Position numbers and translations under genes: made by a program. A stretch of DNA of 64,000 nt from Stylophora pistillata. Taxonomy: Eukaryota. A model generated the notes under the pieces. That model ran no database searches, had not been told where the DNA came from, and worked only from the letters and a program-made list of their open reading frames with translations. Shown one piece after another: positions 8,405-29,876 of this stretch (positions are counted from its first letter, which is position 1; each line of letters starts with the position of its first letter). The stretch covers positions 88,010-152,009 of the forward strand of contig NW_019218118.1 of the NCBI RefSeq assembly GCF_002571385.2, given 5' to 3'.

Positions 8405-10973
8405 TTAAATTCCATTCACCAGCCATAGGTTTACCTCGAAAACTAAAACTGAGGTTGGAAAAAAGAAGAGCCAAGAATGGAACCAAGTAAGGTTTGTATG
8501 AGGGTCTATGAGTTACTGACTGTAACTTCAATTTGCGCAGTAACTGATTGTTTAAATAGTCAAGTCATTAGAATAGTAATTAGTAGATAACATGAGTTTC
8601 ATGAGAATTTTCACTATTGTCACCTCTAATCAGCTGCTGCTGTTAAATTCTGTTGAGTAAAATATTCAAAATTAAAGTAGACTCGTACTATAGAAATGTC
8701 CTCATTGAAACTATTTTTTACAGAAACTGTTACTCTTTATTGCATTGCAGATTGTTCATTAAGCAATTTATATTTTTAGGACCAAATGTTATAAAATTAC
8801 TTAATGCCTCTCTTAGAAAAATGGATTCTCTAGAGCTTTTTTCACTATCGTTTTGTTGGTATCGTAAGCTGTTCTTTAAAAAAATTTAGTGTTACTCTAA
8901 AGGAAAATGAGACTCACCCAAAAGGCGATGGAAAAGTACAGGCAGCACTGACTCTCTGCATCGATGGCTAAGGTGATTTTTCCTTGTTCTTGACAAGGGT
9001 CCTCGGAGTCACCAACATACTGGACTCGGAAGTGGGACTTGGCTCCTGGTGCTACTCGGTTGTTGCTTTCACATTTAATGTTGGCAACTCTAACAACCTA
9101 AAGTATCAGAAATTGATCAATTTGTAATCCTTGAAAAGCACAATTTAAAGAGAAGTCGAATCCCCTATTTGTTCGACAACAGTAGACTTATTGACAAGAA
9201 AGCGTAAGAAAAAAAAAAACGAAACAGTCAGAGTCTACTCTTAATTCTAAAGAAATAGAGGGTGTCCAACAAGACCTGGACACCTATGTAAACTACATAT
9301 TTGGATTAAAGGTTCCAAATTATAAAATTAAGAAACATTTCACTAACACTATCATCTGGTGTAAAGATTTTACTTTTTATATCTCAAATATACTTGTATT
9401 TACAAAGTCGCGGCCTCTTGCATCCACAGGAGTGACAAAGTTTTCTTGCTGTTGATCCTCAATTTGAAACGAAATTCTGATTTGCTCGCGAACAAATGCA
9501 GTGTGAAAATCTTGGCTTCTTCCATTGTTTACGCAAAATGATATTTGTCTTGTTGAGTAACCTTGCCTGGTTCCCTCATCTACGTAACTCTGACGAATTG
9601 TGTCATACACCTGTACGAAAAAAAATTGACCATGTAAAAAACTATTTAACTCTGTTTGAAAACTTGCAAATAATATTAAGAAATATATACTACACTCACC
9701 TGTCTCTCTTTCTCAGGAATCATATAAAGTATAAACAACTTCTCTTTCCTCTCTTGGTGGGTTCTTTCAAAAAGGAAGAGCACCACTGTTAATCCAGGCA
9801 ACGGATACTGCACAGAATGGTGACACACATCTGCGACGAAGATGAAATGAAAATAAATGTGTTGATAACGTGGATACAAATTAGTCTAATTGTTACGCAG
9901 TTGATTCCGTAAAAAGTATCGATTAGATATACATATTGAAAGAGTTTCATGCAACTTAACTCATGTTTAACTTTACTTTTACGTCAACGTTGAAATGGAA
10001 GGTAAAGCAGATTTCAAGTTGGAGACTTCTTTGGATAGAGCAGAACTCGGTGACTTGTACATGTACAATTATATGGGCTTTGAAGGGGTTTTAATTTAAT
10101 CCGGCTAATTTGACGAGTTAAATGCTGATGCATCGATCATACTTCTCAAAATTCACAAATCAAAATCCTAACTTACAAAAGAGCAGTAGAATTGACACAC
10201 ACCATCTCTGAACACAAGAGATCAAGGTTATCGAACTTACGTATTACAGGGATTTTCTCTAGCTGAGAGACAGAAGCCTGCACTGTCTTTAAAGATGCTG
10301 CTTGCGTTGAGGTGCCGCAGACCTCATCTTCTAGGGAAACGCTGGGAAGCGTGGGCAAATGGCCACTGTATGACTGAGGAAAAACGCTTAATAAGGTTTC
10401 TTCAGTTTGATTCGGATTTACGTGGGATCTGTTTAATTTTCCTTGCTGAGTGCGGTTCCTAGTTATTGCGTTACCACATAGCCCACAGACCACTACTTCA
10501 GGGGCTGCGTTGGGCGCTAACGTAGGTTGTCCTTCAAAATTACAGGAACACAATTCACTTTCTGTTCTTGATCGTTCCAAACGGTCATTCCTACGTGCTG
10601 TTTTGGCCAAGTTTTCTTCCAAGTCGGAGTCGCCGTCAGATTTACTCTGTGCATCATTCGCTATTCCAAGGAGATCTTCGTTGTTATCTTCGCTTTCCAA
10701 GGACTCATCTCTATTTCCGTCGTTCTACAGAATGAAATGAACATATATTGTTGTTGTAGTCTTGTCTTCGGTACAAAAATCTTCTATTTATATTCAAATC
10801 GAGAACGATCGAAAACGAAATTATAGAAAGGGATTGATGAGATCAAGATAACTGTTTCGAAAGTGAAGCAGAGAAAAGCGGCTTAGATATATCGACAAAT
10901 TGTAAGTGGAGGGCGAACATCGTCACCACTGCTTAGAACTTACCATGTCTTCGTTTTTATCTTCTGTTGACAT
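8405..10973 (-). CDS. Disordered acidic N-terminus + UPA-like domain, no death fold (~353 aa), copy A. Exons 10973-10944, 10724-10241, 9830-9700, 9610-9404, 9097-8918, 8434-8405
   Basis: Open spliced frame with canonical GT-AG sites, all conserved in copy B. GLTVVLFLFER..KLFILYMIP resembles the first UPA exon of the CARD gene and of the ZU5-UPA genes. The last exon is less certain. Confidence 0.75.
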
Positions 10974-11083
10974 TGCTTCTGTTTCTTCTAGGACCTCTAT
11001 TCAATCTGGTGATCAAAAATCTAATGATCCCTCGGAAAACGAAAACTAAACTCTTTTCTGGTGACTTACTCCTCGTCCCTTTG

Positions 11084-26700: not shown

Positions 26701-29700
26701 TTCATGCATTGAACCCTCCTAGCTTCACTTTTCTTTGATTCAGAGCCTTTTAAAAGTGTGCTAATAAAAAAAATGGTCGACAAGAGAATTTTAAAATTTT
26801 TTATGGAAAGAAAAATCAAGGCTTGTTTGCACTGAAAGAACTTCCTCCTATGTATAGGACACCTGCTGGAAAAAGTGATTGAAAATAGAATGATATTAAA
26901 TTCCAAAAAAATTGCAAAATGATAGTAGTGATGTAAATAATTATAAATAGTCACTGTGATATTTCATTTTACATTAAGTAAAAAAATAATGTGGTTTGCT
27001 TTAAAGGTTAATTAACTTTGTTGATTTGCCCATGCAGTTCAAGTATGTCTCCCATTAGTTCCTCAAATTGTATTATTCTACACTCTCAATTCATTCAATA
27101 ATCCATAAATGAGGTCAGAGGGAACTTACTTTTTCATGTCAGTGGCAAATTATCCTGCAGATGTCAGTCGTTTTTTAAGAATGGCTGCCTGTAAGGATCG
27201 AGAATCGTCCTTCAGCGACCATTTTGGTGAATGGCTCATATTTTGCCCAACGATACCCTTTGGTAAACTGTTTTCAAAAATCAAGTTTAAGAGTTCCGAC
27301 GAGTGTTAATTTACCAGAAATTTGCGAAAATTTGAAAACGCGGTTTAAGTGCGGTTTTCCGCCTGGCAAATTGTCCAAAATTCACTGCAAAACCCAAGCT
27401 CCGTTGAAGGTTTAAAATGAATTCAGTTAACACCAAACTTCACACGTTTTAAGAAAAAGTCTTCCCATTCATTTGTGTTATGTTAATTTTTTCCGTACAC
27501 ATCTATCTTGTGATTTTTTTTTGTCCCTTAGCAACACCCTCAAAAAGTGCTGTACATGGAGCGAAAAATAGGTAAAATTTAACACGATAAAAGTATACCT
27601 GGTACATAATTTTTTAAATTTTTAACTAGATATTCGTAATAAAATGTCATTATTCAATACCTGAGTAAAATTTGAGGCTTTGAATCCGAACCCTTCCTTT
27701 TGAAAATACCACAAATGTTTGTGTCCTGAGCGAGCAGAAGATATGTGTTGTGTAAACAAACGCTAATCTAATTATTCCCTGCCAGGTAGAAAAAGGTTTT
27801 GAAATCAACTTTAATTTTGGAAATTTTGGCTGGTATGCCACAAGATATTAGGCAAAAGGGAAATCATACATTCAGAGTTGCGTGAGAGCAAAGAGAAAAT
27901 AAAATCAGTGTCGAAAATGTACATANAGTAACTGTCTCAGTTCACAAAGAGACTACTGAGTCCTCCTTGGTTGTTAAGCAATCTGCTGTATTATTCATGT
28001 TATCTGTATGCTTTTGTTTAATCACACAGTTCATCACACAAGCAAGTTTAAAGGAGTCTTATCAAACAATTCCCAGAGCAGCAATACACTTTAAACATGA
28101 CAATGGCCGCAACAGAGACTTCCTTTGCATATTGGAACTTACTGCTGAAGATACAACTACAACAATTTGCGCAGTTGCCTCGATTAGAGAGGTAAATGCT
28201 TTGTTTTTTCAAAAGATAATCTATATGAATTGAAATTATCAAAATAATTTTGAAAAAGTTTATTTCACATAAATTTAGTCAATAGATTTATCAGCTAGCA
28301 TGATATTTTTTATCATTTATATTAACAATGAAATTTGTGGCAATTGATTTTTGCAACTATGAAGATCTTAAGTGTAATGTGTTTTTCGTAGATTTTATTT
28401 TCAAAGCCTTAAGATACAATAATGTCATATCTCATACATGCATGAGAAACTAAAACATTGTTCAATTGCACAATTTTAATTTTTTGTCTCCTTCTTTGTA
28501 GGATCCATATGGAAAGTTTCAAGGGCACCAACCAGGATGTGTTGATGACAGTTATCCAATAGTGAATGGGAGAAACTTGTGTGGTAAGACCACAACAATT
28601 TTATAACTGAGTTATTGGTACTCAACATCACAATTTAGCTACCGTGGGAAGCCAGTGATAGTTATCAACCTCTTGCTTGATCAAAAAATTAAAATTTTTA
28701 AATGAAGTTTTATTTCCTAAAACATGGTATTTCTGGACCACAGACTTTGCATTTTAATTCCAATAGCCGCAATGTAGCCCTGTGTTTTTCACAGAGAACC
28801 TGAGTGTACAGAATACAGCATAACATAAGTCGTTCTGAAATTACAAGTTGATATACGTGTGTATTCATAAGATCTCATTCCTACAAAAGTCATAATTCCG
28901 AGTTGTCAGCTAATCAGGGGAAACCCGTATAAAGTGGTATATTATAGGAATATCCATGTTCACATACATCCAACTGAACAGTGTATCAATCACGTTCTAG
29001 TGTTAGAAAGCTCCTTTTTTAATAGTTTCCATTGTCATTCCTTCTCAAGAGTATAAAGCATATTCAACCGAGATTTAGTTCTAAAAGAAAACAAAATTGT
29101 CATAGAAAGACCGATGTAAAAATCAAAAAATGTCAAAAGTTTGAATTATGAATAGTTAGGCACATCTAGTTTTTTAATGTTGTTAAGAAACTGGTCTCCC
29201 TGGAGGAAGAAAACCAACACAAGTATCTGTGTACATTTGATCATTTTGCCAATTAGACTACCCAGGGTTTGACATCAAATATTACAATGTCTACTTTTCC
29301 ACGATGAAAAGGGAGGATTTCCGGAAAATGTATACAAGTGAGAAACTCAGAGAGAAAGCTCAATTTTCAAAAGTGTTTACTTAAGATCTTAGGGAAGTAG
29401 CTCACTTGACTTTTTTGTTTTTAAATCTCTGCGTTTTACATTTCTCCAAGACAAGTTCATGACTTGCAATGTAACTTACCTCGAACAAGTTGCCTTAACT
29501 CAACTGATTGATGCCATTTTACTCTCTTGAAGACCCACTGATCATCAACCAAGACAAACCATCACCTTGTCTTAAAGATCTCCCAGAAGAGGTACTTCAA
29601 GCTCTTAGTGAGAAACTCGATATGTTCCTGAAGGGAGTTGGCAATTGGAGGCATGTTGCAACATGCCTTGGATTCACTGAGGAAGAGATTCAGATTTTCC

Positions 29701-29876
29701 GAAATGAAATGTTGACATCGGATGGAAGTCCTTGCACTGTTATGTTGGAGGCACTGATGGAGAAGTCTCCACAGTTCACTGTAGCAGAATTTGTGCATAT
29801 TTTACAAGAAAGGAAAATTCAGCGCTTCGATGCTGTGGAAGTTCTCGAGCCTCATTTGTACAATAGCAGAGAATGA
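23747..29876 (+). CDS. TNF receptor (about 6 CRDs)-TM-ZU5-UPA-death domain chimeric receptor (~804 aa), copy A. Exons 23747-23803, 24253-25321, 25602-26152, 26432-26581, 28030-28191, 28502-28583, 29533-29876
   Basis: Signal exon MYLLSLCLRCTFHFHLITS; CRDs (CPPGMGL..CG..C..C..GKSYS..CQPC); TM IVIILSTVSGALLIIMVILVII; ZU5 LSPLIKFHPFGKQLSEQVQVRIPHSA; UPA KRFQCAVF..YLYVFDD; DD LSEKLD..NWRHVATCLGF..SPCTVML..TVAEFVHIL..RFDAVEVL. All phases are compatible. Confidence 0.88.
27178..27926. mobile_element. ~750-bp insertion in an intron of the copy A receptor (probable DNA-transposon remnant)
   Basis: Flanks are contiguous in copy B (gtcagtcattttttgagtaactgtctc, 55547-55573). There is an N at 27926. Confidence 0.5.

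What the first reader, a model, noticed from the sequence alone, without database searches (positions are those of the whole stretch)
8405..29876. Candidate new immune module: two head-to-head, NF-kB-site-sharing receptor/adaptor pairs built on ZU5-UPA, one armed and one effector-less
Seen: four genes in the order <-[IDR-UPA] kB [SP-TM-ZU5-UPA]-> <-[IDR-UPA-CARD] kB [TNFR-TM-ZU5-UPA-DD]->, repeated in unit B. Each pair couples a membrane ZU5-UPA protein to a soluble UPA-like protein across one short promoter. Pair 1 looks like pair 2 with the ligand-binding ectodomain, the DD and the CARD all removed. Known: UPA-CARD is the signalling fragment of CARD8/NLRP1, where UPA promotes oligomerisation; ZU5-UPA-DD is the UNC5/PIDD/ankyrin supramodule; head-to-head sensor/helper pairs are known for plant NLRs. 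Inference: a TNF-type receptor signals through UPA-UPA contacts to a separately encoded UPA-CARD caspase adaptor, and the co-induced stripped pair acts as decoy or tuner. I know of no description of this arrangement but cannot check the literature.
Basis: partly seen in the sequence, partly recalled or inferred. Interest (0 to 1): 0.92.

Follow-up and report, generated by a model that had tools for sequence, protein, structure and literature searches.

The report
Coral death-receptor and CARD-adaptor gene pairs
In a stony-coral genome a TNF-type death receptor gene and a CARD adaptor gene sit head to head on one short promoter that carries a conserved NF-kB site, an arrangement also found in other corals, but whether the two proteins touch through UPA domains is not shown.

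Summary
The layout is real. Two divergent gene pairs (8.4-30 kb) are repeated in a second unit (38-58 kb). Pfam confirms TNFR repeats, ZU5, death domain and CARD. RNA contigs give a spliced six-exon, 439-aa CARD gene and the 5' exons of the receptor. The assembly gap lies in an intergenic transposon fragment and touches no exon.

Each intergenic region has an inverted CCAAT box next to the palindrome GGGGAATCCCC, or a one-base variant. This is the exact site that sea-anemone NF-kB binds in a published gel-shift probe. Three other coral assemblies keep the armed pair, its orientation and both motifs.

The UPA label for the minus-strand genes is not established. Pfam, PDB sequence searches, profile comparison with the receptors' post-ZU5 region and two low-confidence AlphaFold models gave nothing specific. 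Only language-model features pointed to UPA/FIIND, for two orthologues.

The two minus-strand genes do share one domain (hhalign P 3e-5). The stripped pair is intact and under purifying selection, but was found only on this contig and is missing at the matching place in another coral.

Co-regulation is well supported. Physical coupling and the decoy role are inference.

The parts
8918..10973 (-). Pair 1, minus-strand gene, unit A. It encodes an acidic disordered N-terminus and a middle domain, with no CARD. Exons: 10944-10973 (ATG at 10973), 10241-10724, 9700-9830, 9404-9610 and 8918-9097.
   Evidence: Splice sites and reading frames were read from the sequence. hhalign against the CARD-gene family's middle domain is colinear over 145 columns, P 3e-5. 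dN/dS between unit A and unit B is 0.21-0.32. No RNA was laid on this gene.
11083..11120 (.). Pair 1 shared promoter core. Inverted CCAAT box GATTGG at 11083-11088 and kB palindrome GGGGAATCCCC at 11110-11120. It lies between the ATGs at 10973 (minus) and 11398 (plus).
   Evidence: The same two motifs occur in unit B at about 41275.
11398..14475 (+). Pair 1, plus-strand gene, unit A. It encodes a signal peptide, a short ectodomain, a membrane span, ZU5 and a post-ZU5 (UPA-position) region. Exons: 11398-11439, 12601-12835, 12936-13528, 13814-13957 and 14308-14475. The 3' end is unsettled (at or before 15521).
   Evidence: The ZU5 exon is 30-34% identical to the pair-2 ZU5 exon. It is 44-49% identical to paralogues elsewhere that carry a TNFR exon. 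dN/dS is 0.28-0.69.
16033..16643 (-). Assembly gap (16033-16054) next to a reverse-transcriptase-like fragment. It is intergenic and specific to unit A.
19000..23055 (-). Pair 2, minus-strand gene, unit A. The protein has 439 residues: disordered N-terminus (1-160), conserved beta-rich middle domain (about 165-333) and CARD (335-439). Exons: 22441 to about 23055 (ATG at 22918), 21828-21949, 21450-21629, 20630-20803, 19903-19948, and from 19450 down to at least 19000, with the stop at 19131-19133.
   Evidence: All five introns appear as CT..AC joints in RNA contigs of three or four runs. The joined frame is open for 439 codons. A transcript-derived database protein of the same length is 97.7% identical (P0024). 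Pfam CARD.
23179..23228 (.). Pair 2 shared promoter core. GATTGG at 23179-23184 and GGGGAATCCCC at 23218-23228. It lies between the 5' ends of the two transcripts (about 23020-23055 and about 23285).
   Evidence: The motifs and their roughly 32-base spacing are conserved in loci L002 and L004, with similar motif copies in L003.
23285..29876 (+). Pair 2, plus-strand gene, unit A: TNFR repeats, membrane span, ZU5, post-ZU5 (UPA-position) region and death domain. Exons: a 5' UTR exon ending at 23344, 23729-23803 (ATG at 23747), 24253-25321, 25602-26152, 26432-26581 and 28030-28191. One or more small exons are unsettled. The death-domain exon lies within 29508-29876.
   Evidence: The first two junctions come from RNA. 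The others come from consensus splice sites, frame and orthologous exons. Pfam TNFR_c6, ZU5 and Death. dN/dS is 0.08-0.43.
39069..57514 (.). Unit B copy of all four genes. Pair 1 minus gene 39069-40904; kB site 41275-41285; pair 1 plus gene about 41760-43690; CARD gene 46874-50518; kB variant 50825-50834; receptor 52270-57514.
   Evidence: Every exon tested is free of stop codons.

Best explanation
The locus holds NF-kB-linked, divergently transcribed gene pairs of a coral cell-death or inflammatory pathway.

Pair 2 is the old, conserved unit. It consists of a type I membrane receptor and a cytosolic adaptor.
- The receptor has TNF-receptor cysteine-rich repeats outside the cell. Inside it has a UNC5/PIDD-style tail: ZU5, a post-ZU5 region and a death domain.
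- The adaptor has 439 residues: a disordered N-terminus, a conserved beta-rich domain of about 170 residues, and a C-terminal CARD.

Both genes start from one promoter of at most about 0.3 kb. It contains an inverted CCAAT box and the palindromic kB site GGGGAATCCCC. Activation of NF-kB should therefore raise receptor and adaptor together.

The following steps are inferred.
- The receptor signals through its death domain.
- The CARD protein links the same pathway to a CARD-bearing caspase or a BCL10-like partner.
- The middle domain, probably UPA-like, promotes self-assembly or docking.

Pair 1 is a younger, lineage-restricted derivative. Its receptor has lost the ligand-binding repeats and has no death domain. 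Its partner has the same middle domain but no CARD. Both are kept under purifying selection. They most likely modulate the armed pair as a competitor or decoy; this too is inferred.
For: - Domains.
- Spliced, polyadenylated transcripts of both pair-2 genes, with 5' ends that abut.
- The kB 11-mer is the Nematostella IkB-promoter site used as a gel-shift probe for anemone NF-kB (PMC2751831).
- The 11-mer occurs about 225 times in 397.6 Mb. That predicts about 0.04 copies per 64 kb; the window has three, all in divergent promoters.
- Loci L002, L003 and L004, from three other ENA assemblies that align to the window only in exons at about 70% identity, show the same arrangement. They have the same minus-strand gene head to head with a TNFR-ZU5-death-domain gene. 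GATTGG and the kB palindrome lie between them in otherwise unalignable sequence.
- Family members are annotated in Montipora and Orbicella.
- The pair-1 minus gene shares the middle domain: hhalign P 3e-5, colinear, and shuffled exon order loses the signal.
- Every exon of all four genes tested in both units (putative 3'-terminal exons not examined) is open, with dN/dS 0.08-0.69.
- Language-model features of the middle domain of two orthologues about 40% identical both rank UPA-FIIND/UPA clusters first, at 0.75-0.81.
Against: - No expression series was examined, so co-induction is inferred from the promoter alone.
- The language-model scores are below the tool's 0.9 trust line.
- Pair 1 was found only on this contig and not at the matching place in another coral. 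It cannot be a general part of the system.
- Bidirectional promoters are common and do not prove that the products interact.
Confidence: 0.5

Rival explanations
1. Split-FIIND reading. The middle domain is a true UPA. It binds the receptor's ZU5-UPA tail directly, so the receptor holds or releases a separately encoded UPA-CARD fragment that then forms filaments and activates a caspase. Pair 1 competes for the same contacts.
For: - The domain sits directly in front of the CARD, as in CARD8 and NLRP1 (established knowledge).
- Language-model hits to UPA-FIIND plus CARD clusters, for two orthologues.
- In both the receptors and the adaptors this region is cut by three phase-0 introns into exons of similar size.
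- The linkage of the two genes is conserved.
Against: - There is no sequence, profile or fold support for UPA.
- The receptor already carries its own post-ZU5 region, which would occupy its ZU5.
- No ZU5 and no autoproteolytic motif occur in the adaptor.
- No binding evidence of any kind exists.
Confidence: 0.17
2. The genes are co-regulated but functionally independent neighbours. The shared promoter only places two NF-kB-responsive immune genes side by side. The CARD protein serves other upstream sensors.
For: - The same kB 11-mer lies upstream of the three ZU5 gene copies examined in a tandem cluster on another contig, where no partner gene was detected.
- TNFR-ZU5 paralogues elsewhere have no detectable divergent partner.
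Against: - The specific pairing, its orientation and the promoter footprint persist between assemblies whose exons align at only about 70%.
- The pairing was duplicated as a pair at least twice on this contig.
Confidence: 0.25
3. Pair 1 is a by-product of local birth-and-death duplication. It has a new or no role, and is neither a tuner nor a decoy of pair 2.
For: - The contig carries further decayed copies: stops in a third pair-1 copy and in other CARD and ZU5 fragments.
- Pair 1 is absent at the matching place in another coral.
- Constraint on the pair-1 receptor is relaxed, with dN/dS up to 0.69.
Against: - Both copies of both pair-1 genes are open.
- The partner gene has dN/dS of 0.21-0.32.
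- The kB and CCAAT motifs are kept in both units.
Confidence: 0.3

Closest known systems
UNC5 netrin receptors, UNC5CL and PIDD1 (ZU5-UPA-death-domain proteins)
   Same: The cytoplasmic order is ZU5, then a region in the UPA position, then a death domain. Like UNC5 and UNC5CL, the protein is membrane-anchored. The pair-1 receptor (short ectodomain, membrane span, ZU5) resembles UNC5CL in layout. The comparison with UNC5CL rests on my own knowledge.
   Different: The ectodomain is made of TNF-receptor cysteine-rich repeats, not Ig/thrombospondin repeats or nothing. The canonical His-Phe-Ser autocleavage motif is absent from pair 2. Pair 1 has His-Leu-Ser at that place. The UPA region is not recognised by Pfam at significance.
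Death-domain TNF receptors (TNFR1, Fas, p75NTR, EDAR)
   Same: TNFR_c6 repeats, a single membrane span and a C-terminal death domain.
   Different: A ZU5 plus post-ZU5 module of about 330 residues is inserted between the membrane and the death domain. My literature searches found no description of this fusion. The library holds open-access papers only.
CARD8 / NLRP1 C-terminal fragment (UPA-CARD)
   Same: A beta-rich domain of about 150-170 residues lies directly N-terminal to a CARD, with a disordered N-terminus as in CARD8. Language-model neighbours are UPA-FIIND plus CARD clusters.
   Different: There is no ZU5, no FIIND hit and no autoproteolysis site. The protein is made as such, not released by cleavage. 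UPA identity was not demonstrated.
Nematostella IkB promoter kB site and cnidarian NF-kB targets
   Same: The 11-base site GGGGAATCCCC is identical (PMC2751831).
   Different: Here the site lies in a bidirectional promoter beside a CCAAT box. Binding in corals was not tested.
Head-to-head paired plant NLR genes (sensor and helper)
   Same: A divergent gene pair on one short promoter, kept together through duplication and speciation.
   Different: The protein families are unrelated. In plants the physical pairing of the products has been shown; here it has not.

Membership tests
TNF receptor superfamily | Extracellular TNFR cysteine-rich repeats | tested here: met
   Pfam TNFR_c6, E 4.8e-18, three matched stretches in 24253-25347. 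The same exon occurs in L002, L003 and L004.
TNF receptor superfamily | Signal peptide and a single membrane span | tested here: met
   Read directly. There is a hydrophobic N-terminal exon at 23747-23803, joined by RNA to 24253. A hydrophobic stretch followed by basic residues lies at about 25180-25260. No predictor was run.
ZU5-UPA-death-domain supramodule (UNC5/PIDD/ankyrin) | ZU5 domain | tested here: met
   Pfam ZU5, E 3.9e-7 for pair 2. For pair 1 the evidence is homology to the pair-2 exon, E 1e-15 to 1e-17.
ZU5-UPA-death-domain supramodule (UNC5/PIDD/ankyrin) | UPA domain directly after ZU5 | tested here: inconclusive
   Pfam UPA matches only model positions 2-35, at E 0.18 (P0039) and E 6.5 (window 54057-54158). 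The later exons gave no hit. The position and length fit. The contiguous region could not be folded, because no unaltered reference exists.
ZU5-UPA-death-domain supramodule (UNC5/PIDD/ankyrin) | C-terminal death domain | tested here: met
   Pfam Death, E 1.5e-7, for pair 2. Not met for pair 1, which gave no hit.
UPA-CARD fragment of FIIND proteins (CARD8/NLRP1) | C-terminal CARD | tested here: met
   Pfam CARD, E 4.2e-11. The PDB profile search hit BCL10, caspase-9 and CARD8 CARDs.
UPA-CARD fragment of FIIND proteins (CARD8/NLRP1) | UPA fold in front of the CARD | tested here: inconclusive
   For: language-model hits at 0.75-0.81 in two orthologues. Against or silent: Pfam, the UPA-FIIND genome scan, hhalign P 0.2-0.5, and models of pLDDT 44 and 52 with only generic sandwich matches.
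UPA-CARD fragment of FIIND proteins (CARD8/NLRP1) | ZU5 half of FIIND with an autoproteolytic site that releases UPA-CARD | tested here: not met
   There is no ZU5 or FIIND hit in P0001, P0006 or the exons. The region upstream of the middle domain is disordered and poorly conserved.
NF-kB target promoter | Consensus kB site in the promoter | tested here: met
   GGGRNNYYCC matches lie in all four divergent promoters. The 11-mer is identical to a site bound by anemone NF-kB. It is conserved in three other coral loci.
NF-kB target promoter | Binding by, and induction through, the organism's NF-kB | not testable with these tools
   This needs a gel shift, ChIP, a reporter assay or an expression series.
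Bidirectional (head-to-head) gene pair | Divergent transcripts whose 5' ends lie within about 1 kb | tested here: met
   In pair 2, RNA contigs end at about 23020-23055 (minus) and start at about 23285 or earlier (plus). In pair 1 the ATGs are 425 bases apart; no RNA was laid there.

The most novel reading that the evidence does not exclude
Stony corals use a genetically split FIIND-like system. A TNF-type death receptor with a ZU5-UPA-death-domain tail signals through a separately encoded UPA-CARD adaptor. The adaptor's gene has been tied to the receptor gene by one NF-kB/CCAAT bidirectional promoter since before the corals sampled here diverged. Some lineages add effector-less receptor and adaptor copies as built-in decoys.
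Probability: 0.15. Interest if true: 0.85.

Novelty: new variant of a known kind. Interest (0 to 1): 0.62.

Why it matters
Coral bleaching and disease involve TNF-type, NF-kB and caspase signalling, but the wiring between the many coral receptors and adaptors is mostly unknown.

This locus offers a concrete, testable link. It is a receptor with an unusual domain fusion and a CARD adaptor, kept together with a footprinted NF-kB/CCAAT promoter in assemblies of several corals. It names two proteins to test for interaction. It gives a small promoter to test for NF-kB control. It also provides a natural effector-less pair to test for negative regulation.

If the middle domain proves to be UPA, stand-alone UPA-CARD signalling, known from CARD8 and NLRP1, would be shown to occur in cnidarians as well.

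Tried and rejected
- **Complex prediction.** I ran the receptor ZU5 exon (residues 57-239 of window 25436-26176) against the adaptor middle domain (P0024 160-335). The result was no verdict, score 0.01, with the partner's own fold uncertain. 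This is evidence neither for nor against binding.
- **Receptor UPA against adaptor.** This could not be asked, because no contiguous unaltered reference for the receptor's post-ZU5 region exists. The only gene model found (P0062) is frame-shifted at the start of that region.
- **AlphaFold.** The full-length model had pLDDT 44 and the domain-only model pLDDT 52. Foldseek and VIA-align returned only generic beta-sandwiches.
- **Pfam and family scans.** I ran Pfam on single exons and on orthologues, and UPA and UPA-FIIND scans of the genome. There was no significant UPA hit anywhere.
- **hhalign.** The middle-domain family was compared with block profiles of the receptors' post-ZU5 exons. P was 0.2-0.5, no better than controls with shuffled exon order.
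- **PDB sequence searches.** They returned CARD hits plus chance matches to ribosomal protein eS27 and to designer PPR repeats.
- **CARD remnant in pair 1.** My idea that the last candidate exon of the pair-1 minus gene (8733-8873) is a CARD remnant was rejected. Alignment scores were no better than shuffles.
- **Lost exons in pair 1.** Remnants of a TNFR exon inside pair 1, or of a CARD exon beyond it, were sought and not found.
- **Genomic context of annotated proteins.** Look-ups for the Orbicella and Montipora proteins found them not on record. Two further contigs came without DNA.
- **Joined spliced models.** The joined 439-residue translation was computed in a script only to check the frame. 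It was then replaced by the natural transcript protein P0024 and its cDNA locus L001.

Full report
**What the window is**

The window is eukaryotic DNA at 35-41% G+C with short exons. The sequencing runs that hold it are labelled as a coral or a coral metagenome. It is part of contig C334 of an assembly of 397.6 Mb.

A self-comparison shows a tandem duplication of about 30 kb. Unit A (about 2.7-32.3 kb) and unit B (about 35.3-58.9 kb) are 80-87% identical. The stretch holding the CARD gene is the exception: only its exons align, at 70-81%.

**The gap**

The run of N at 16033-16054 abuts a reverse-transcriptase-like reading frame at 16059-16643 on the minus strand. It lies inside about 0.8 kb that unit B lacks. 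A 15554 to 16713 corresponds to B 44759 to 45135. The gap sits between the 3' ends of two convergent genes, and no exon of the four genes is near it. Nothing was filled in or looked up there.

**Gene models**

I laid RNA contigs from four runs, three of them polyA RNA-seq, on 19000-24999. They gave five joints with CT..AC ends, that is, minus-strand introns. These define six exons of the CARD gene:
- 22441 to about 23055
- 21828-21949
- 21450-21629
- 20630-20803
- 19903-19948
- 19450 down to at least 19000

From the ATG at 22918 the joined frame is open for 439 codons. A transcript-derived database protein of exactly that length, P0024, is 97.7% identical. I used P0024 and its cDNA locus L001 in place of any joined model.

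The same RNA contigs join 23344 to 23729 and 23803 to 24253 with GT..AG ends. The receptor therefore has a 5' UTR exon, a signal-peptide exon (ATG at 23747) and then the TNFR exon. The 5' ends of the two transcripts lie at about 23020-23055 and about 23285. The promoter between them is at most about 0.3 kb.

The remaining receptor exons were read from consensus splice sites, frame and orthologous exons:
- 24253-25321
- 25602-26152
- 26432-26581
- 28030-28191
- the death-domain exon within 29508-29876

The pair-1 models were read the same way and have no RNA support. Their 3' ends are open.

**Domains**

Pfam confirms TNFR_c6, ZU5, Death and CARD. The pair-1 ZU5 exon is a clear paralogue of the pair-2 exon. 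No death domain or CARD was found in the other reading frames of pair 1.

The UPA label is the weak point. For the receptors, the Pfam UPA model matches only its first 35 positions, at the end of the ZU5 exon, with E 0.18 to 6.

For the minus-strand genes, the alignment-based and fold-based tests gave nothing specific:
- Pfam finds only CARD.
- The UPA-FIIND model finds nothing in the genome.
- PDB sequence searches give only CARD hits and chance matches.
- A profile of the family does not align with profiles of the receptors' post-ZU5 exons: P 0.2-0.5, no better than controls with shuffled exon order.

The one positive sign comes from the protein language model. For the middle domain alone, in two orthologues about 40% identical, the nearest clusters are UPA-FIIND plus CARD, FIIND and UNC5-type UPA families, at 0.75-0.81. 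The tool calls such scores a lead only. Still, a chance hit would not be expected to land twice on the family predicted beforehand.

The region is also cut by three phase-0 introns into exons of 50-60 codons, in both the receptors and the adaptors. I put the odds that the domain is UPA-like at about one in two.

**The two minus-strand genes are paralogues**

The same hhalign procedure aligns the pair-1 exons, in their native order, colinearly with the middle-domain family over 145 columns (P 3e-5). With the exon order shuffled, only one exon aligns.

**The promoter**

GGGRNNYYCC occurs at five places in the window. Four of them are the four divergent intergenic regions. Three are the perfect palindrome GGGGAATCCCC and one differs by one base.

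That 11-mer is the kB site of the Nematostella IkB promoter. It was used as a gel-shift probe for anemone NF-kB (PMC2751831). The genome holds about 225 copies in 397.6 Mb, so 0.04 would be expected per 64 kb.

About 20-32 bases to one side lies GATTGG, an inverted CCAAT box. In pair 2 a CACTC follows the palindrome.

**Conservation**

Exon-sized reading frames matching the ZU5 exon lie on long contigs of ENA assemblies. I fetched three of these contigs. They align to the window only in exons, at about 70% identity.
- L002 and L004 show a TNFR exon, a ZU5 exon and a death-domain exon on one strand. The adaptor gene lies head to head on the other strand.
- L004 has all six adaptor exons, including the CARD exon.
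- L003 shows the receptor exons but only exon 2 of the adaptor gene. A retrotransposon occupies the region where the remaining exons would lie.
- GATTGG and the palindrome lie between the two genes, and L003 has two copies of the motif pair.

Annotated family members exist in Montipora and Orbicella. Pair 2 is thus a conserved unit with a footprinted promoter.

Pair 1 is different.
- Its genes were found only on this contig: units A and B plus a decayed third copy.
- They are absent from the 10 kb beyond the CARD gene in the L004 contig.
- The pair-1 receptor is closest (44-49%) to paralogues elsewhere in the genome. Those carry a TNFR exon, showed no death-domain exon and have no detectable divergent partner.

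On that evidence, only the loss of the ectodomain may be specific to pair 1.

**Selection**

Every exon of all four genes that I tested, in both units, is open; the putative 3'-terminal exons were not examined. dN/dS between the units is 0.08-0.69. It is 0.21-0.32 for the pair-1 minus gene.

The CARD gene is far more diverged between the units (dS 0.66-1.3) than its neighbours (0.1-0.5). Both of its types have close relatives among the transcript-derived (Logan) database proteins. The two adaptor types are therefore older than the rest of the unit looks, or the receptors have been homogenised.

**Reading**

Shown:
- the layout
- four of the domain types
- splicing and transcription of pair 2
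- the conserved linkage of pair 2
- the conserved kB and CCAAT footprint
- kinship of the two adaptors
- constraint on all four genes

Inferred:
- co-induction by NF-kB
- action of receptor and adaptor in one pathway
- any physical contact between them
- the decoy role of pair 1

A complex prediction gave no verdict and is listed only among the things tried.

**Literature**

Searches for ZU5 together with coral, cnidarian or TNFR terms found no description of a TNFR-ZU5-death-domain receptor, of a stand-alone UPA-like CARD protein in cnidarians, or of this gene pairing. The library covers open-access papers only, so this is not proof of novelty.

**Verdict**

This is a real and well-conserved receptor/adaptor gene pair with a strong NF-kB promoter signature, built from known domains in a new combination. 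It is a new variant of a known kind. The UPA-contact mechanism and the decoy role remain hypotheses.

Noticed in passing
window 138-3477, 33877-36061 and 62886-63957 (plus strand): Each repeat unit also starts with a smaller TNFR-repeat gene. Its last exon looks like a death domain to the eye but gave no Pfam hit. The first CRD frame (138-410) gave no TNFR hit and the second (992-1282) only a weak one (E 0.02).
   Followed up: partly
window 30249-31472 (plus) and 16059-16643 (minus): These are retroelement fragments. Pfam RVT_1 scores 7e-19 at 30249-30698. They sit between the gene units, and one lies beside the assembly gap.
   Followed up: partly
P0024 residues about 55-80 and about 125-130 (window exon 22441-22918, minus strand): The otherwise variable disordered N-terminus keeps two short motifs across the family. 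One is an acidic stretch ending in Leu-Leu-Leu-Glu. The other is a Pro-x-Gln-Glu motif that fits the TRAF2-type binding consensus (my own knowledge). In the unit A copy the last Glu is Gln.
   Followed up: no
window about 13361-13384 (pair-1 ZU5 exon): At the place of the His-Phe-Ser autocleavage motif of PIDD and UNC5CL, pair 1 has His-Leu-Ser. The related paralogues on other contigs have His-Phe-Ala. Pair 2 and its orthologues have no His-x-Ser there.
   Followed up: partly
G000 contig C77, about 322-444 kb (loci L014-L016): This is a tandem cluster of other ZU5 genes. In each of the three copies examined, the same GGGGAATCCCC site lies about 2.1-2.5 kb upstream of the ZU5 exon, with conserved flanks. 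No adaptor-like partner was detected. Other contigs (C47, C58, C69, C153) also show clusters of the 11-mer.
   Followed up: partly
G000 C1609:5155-11044, C301 about 41.4-49.7 kb and C334:2596-6976 (loci L005-L012): Paralogous TNFR-ZU5 genes without a detected death domain each have a CARD exon on the opposite strand, 1.2-2 kb beyond their last detected exon. This is the same tail-to-tail layout as the pair-1 receptor and the CARD gene in the window. The start of C334 also holds scrambled partial copies.
   Followed up: partly
P0026 (Orbicella faveolata LOC110043482 isoform X2): This annotated isoform keeps the middle domain but ends in a short alternative tail in place of the CARD. It would be a splice-made CARD-less form, comparable to the pair-1 partner. 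It is a predicted isoform only.
   Followed up: no
P0062 (Desmophyllum pertusum hypothetical protein): This public gene model of the receptor's tail is frame-shifted across the end of the ZU5 exon and skips part of the death domain. It is unfit as a template for the post-ZU5 region.
   Followed up: partly
window 19134-22918 against 46874-50518: The two CARD-gene copies are much more diverged (dS 0.66-1.3) than the flanking genes of the same duplicated units (dS 0.1-0.5). Possible causes are older adaptor lineages or gene conversion among the receptors.
   Followed up: partly
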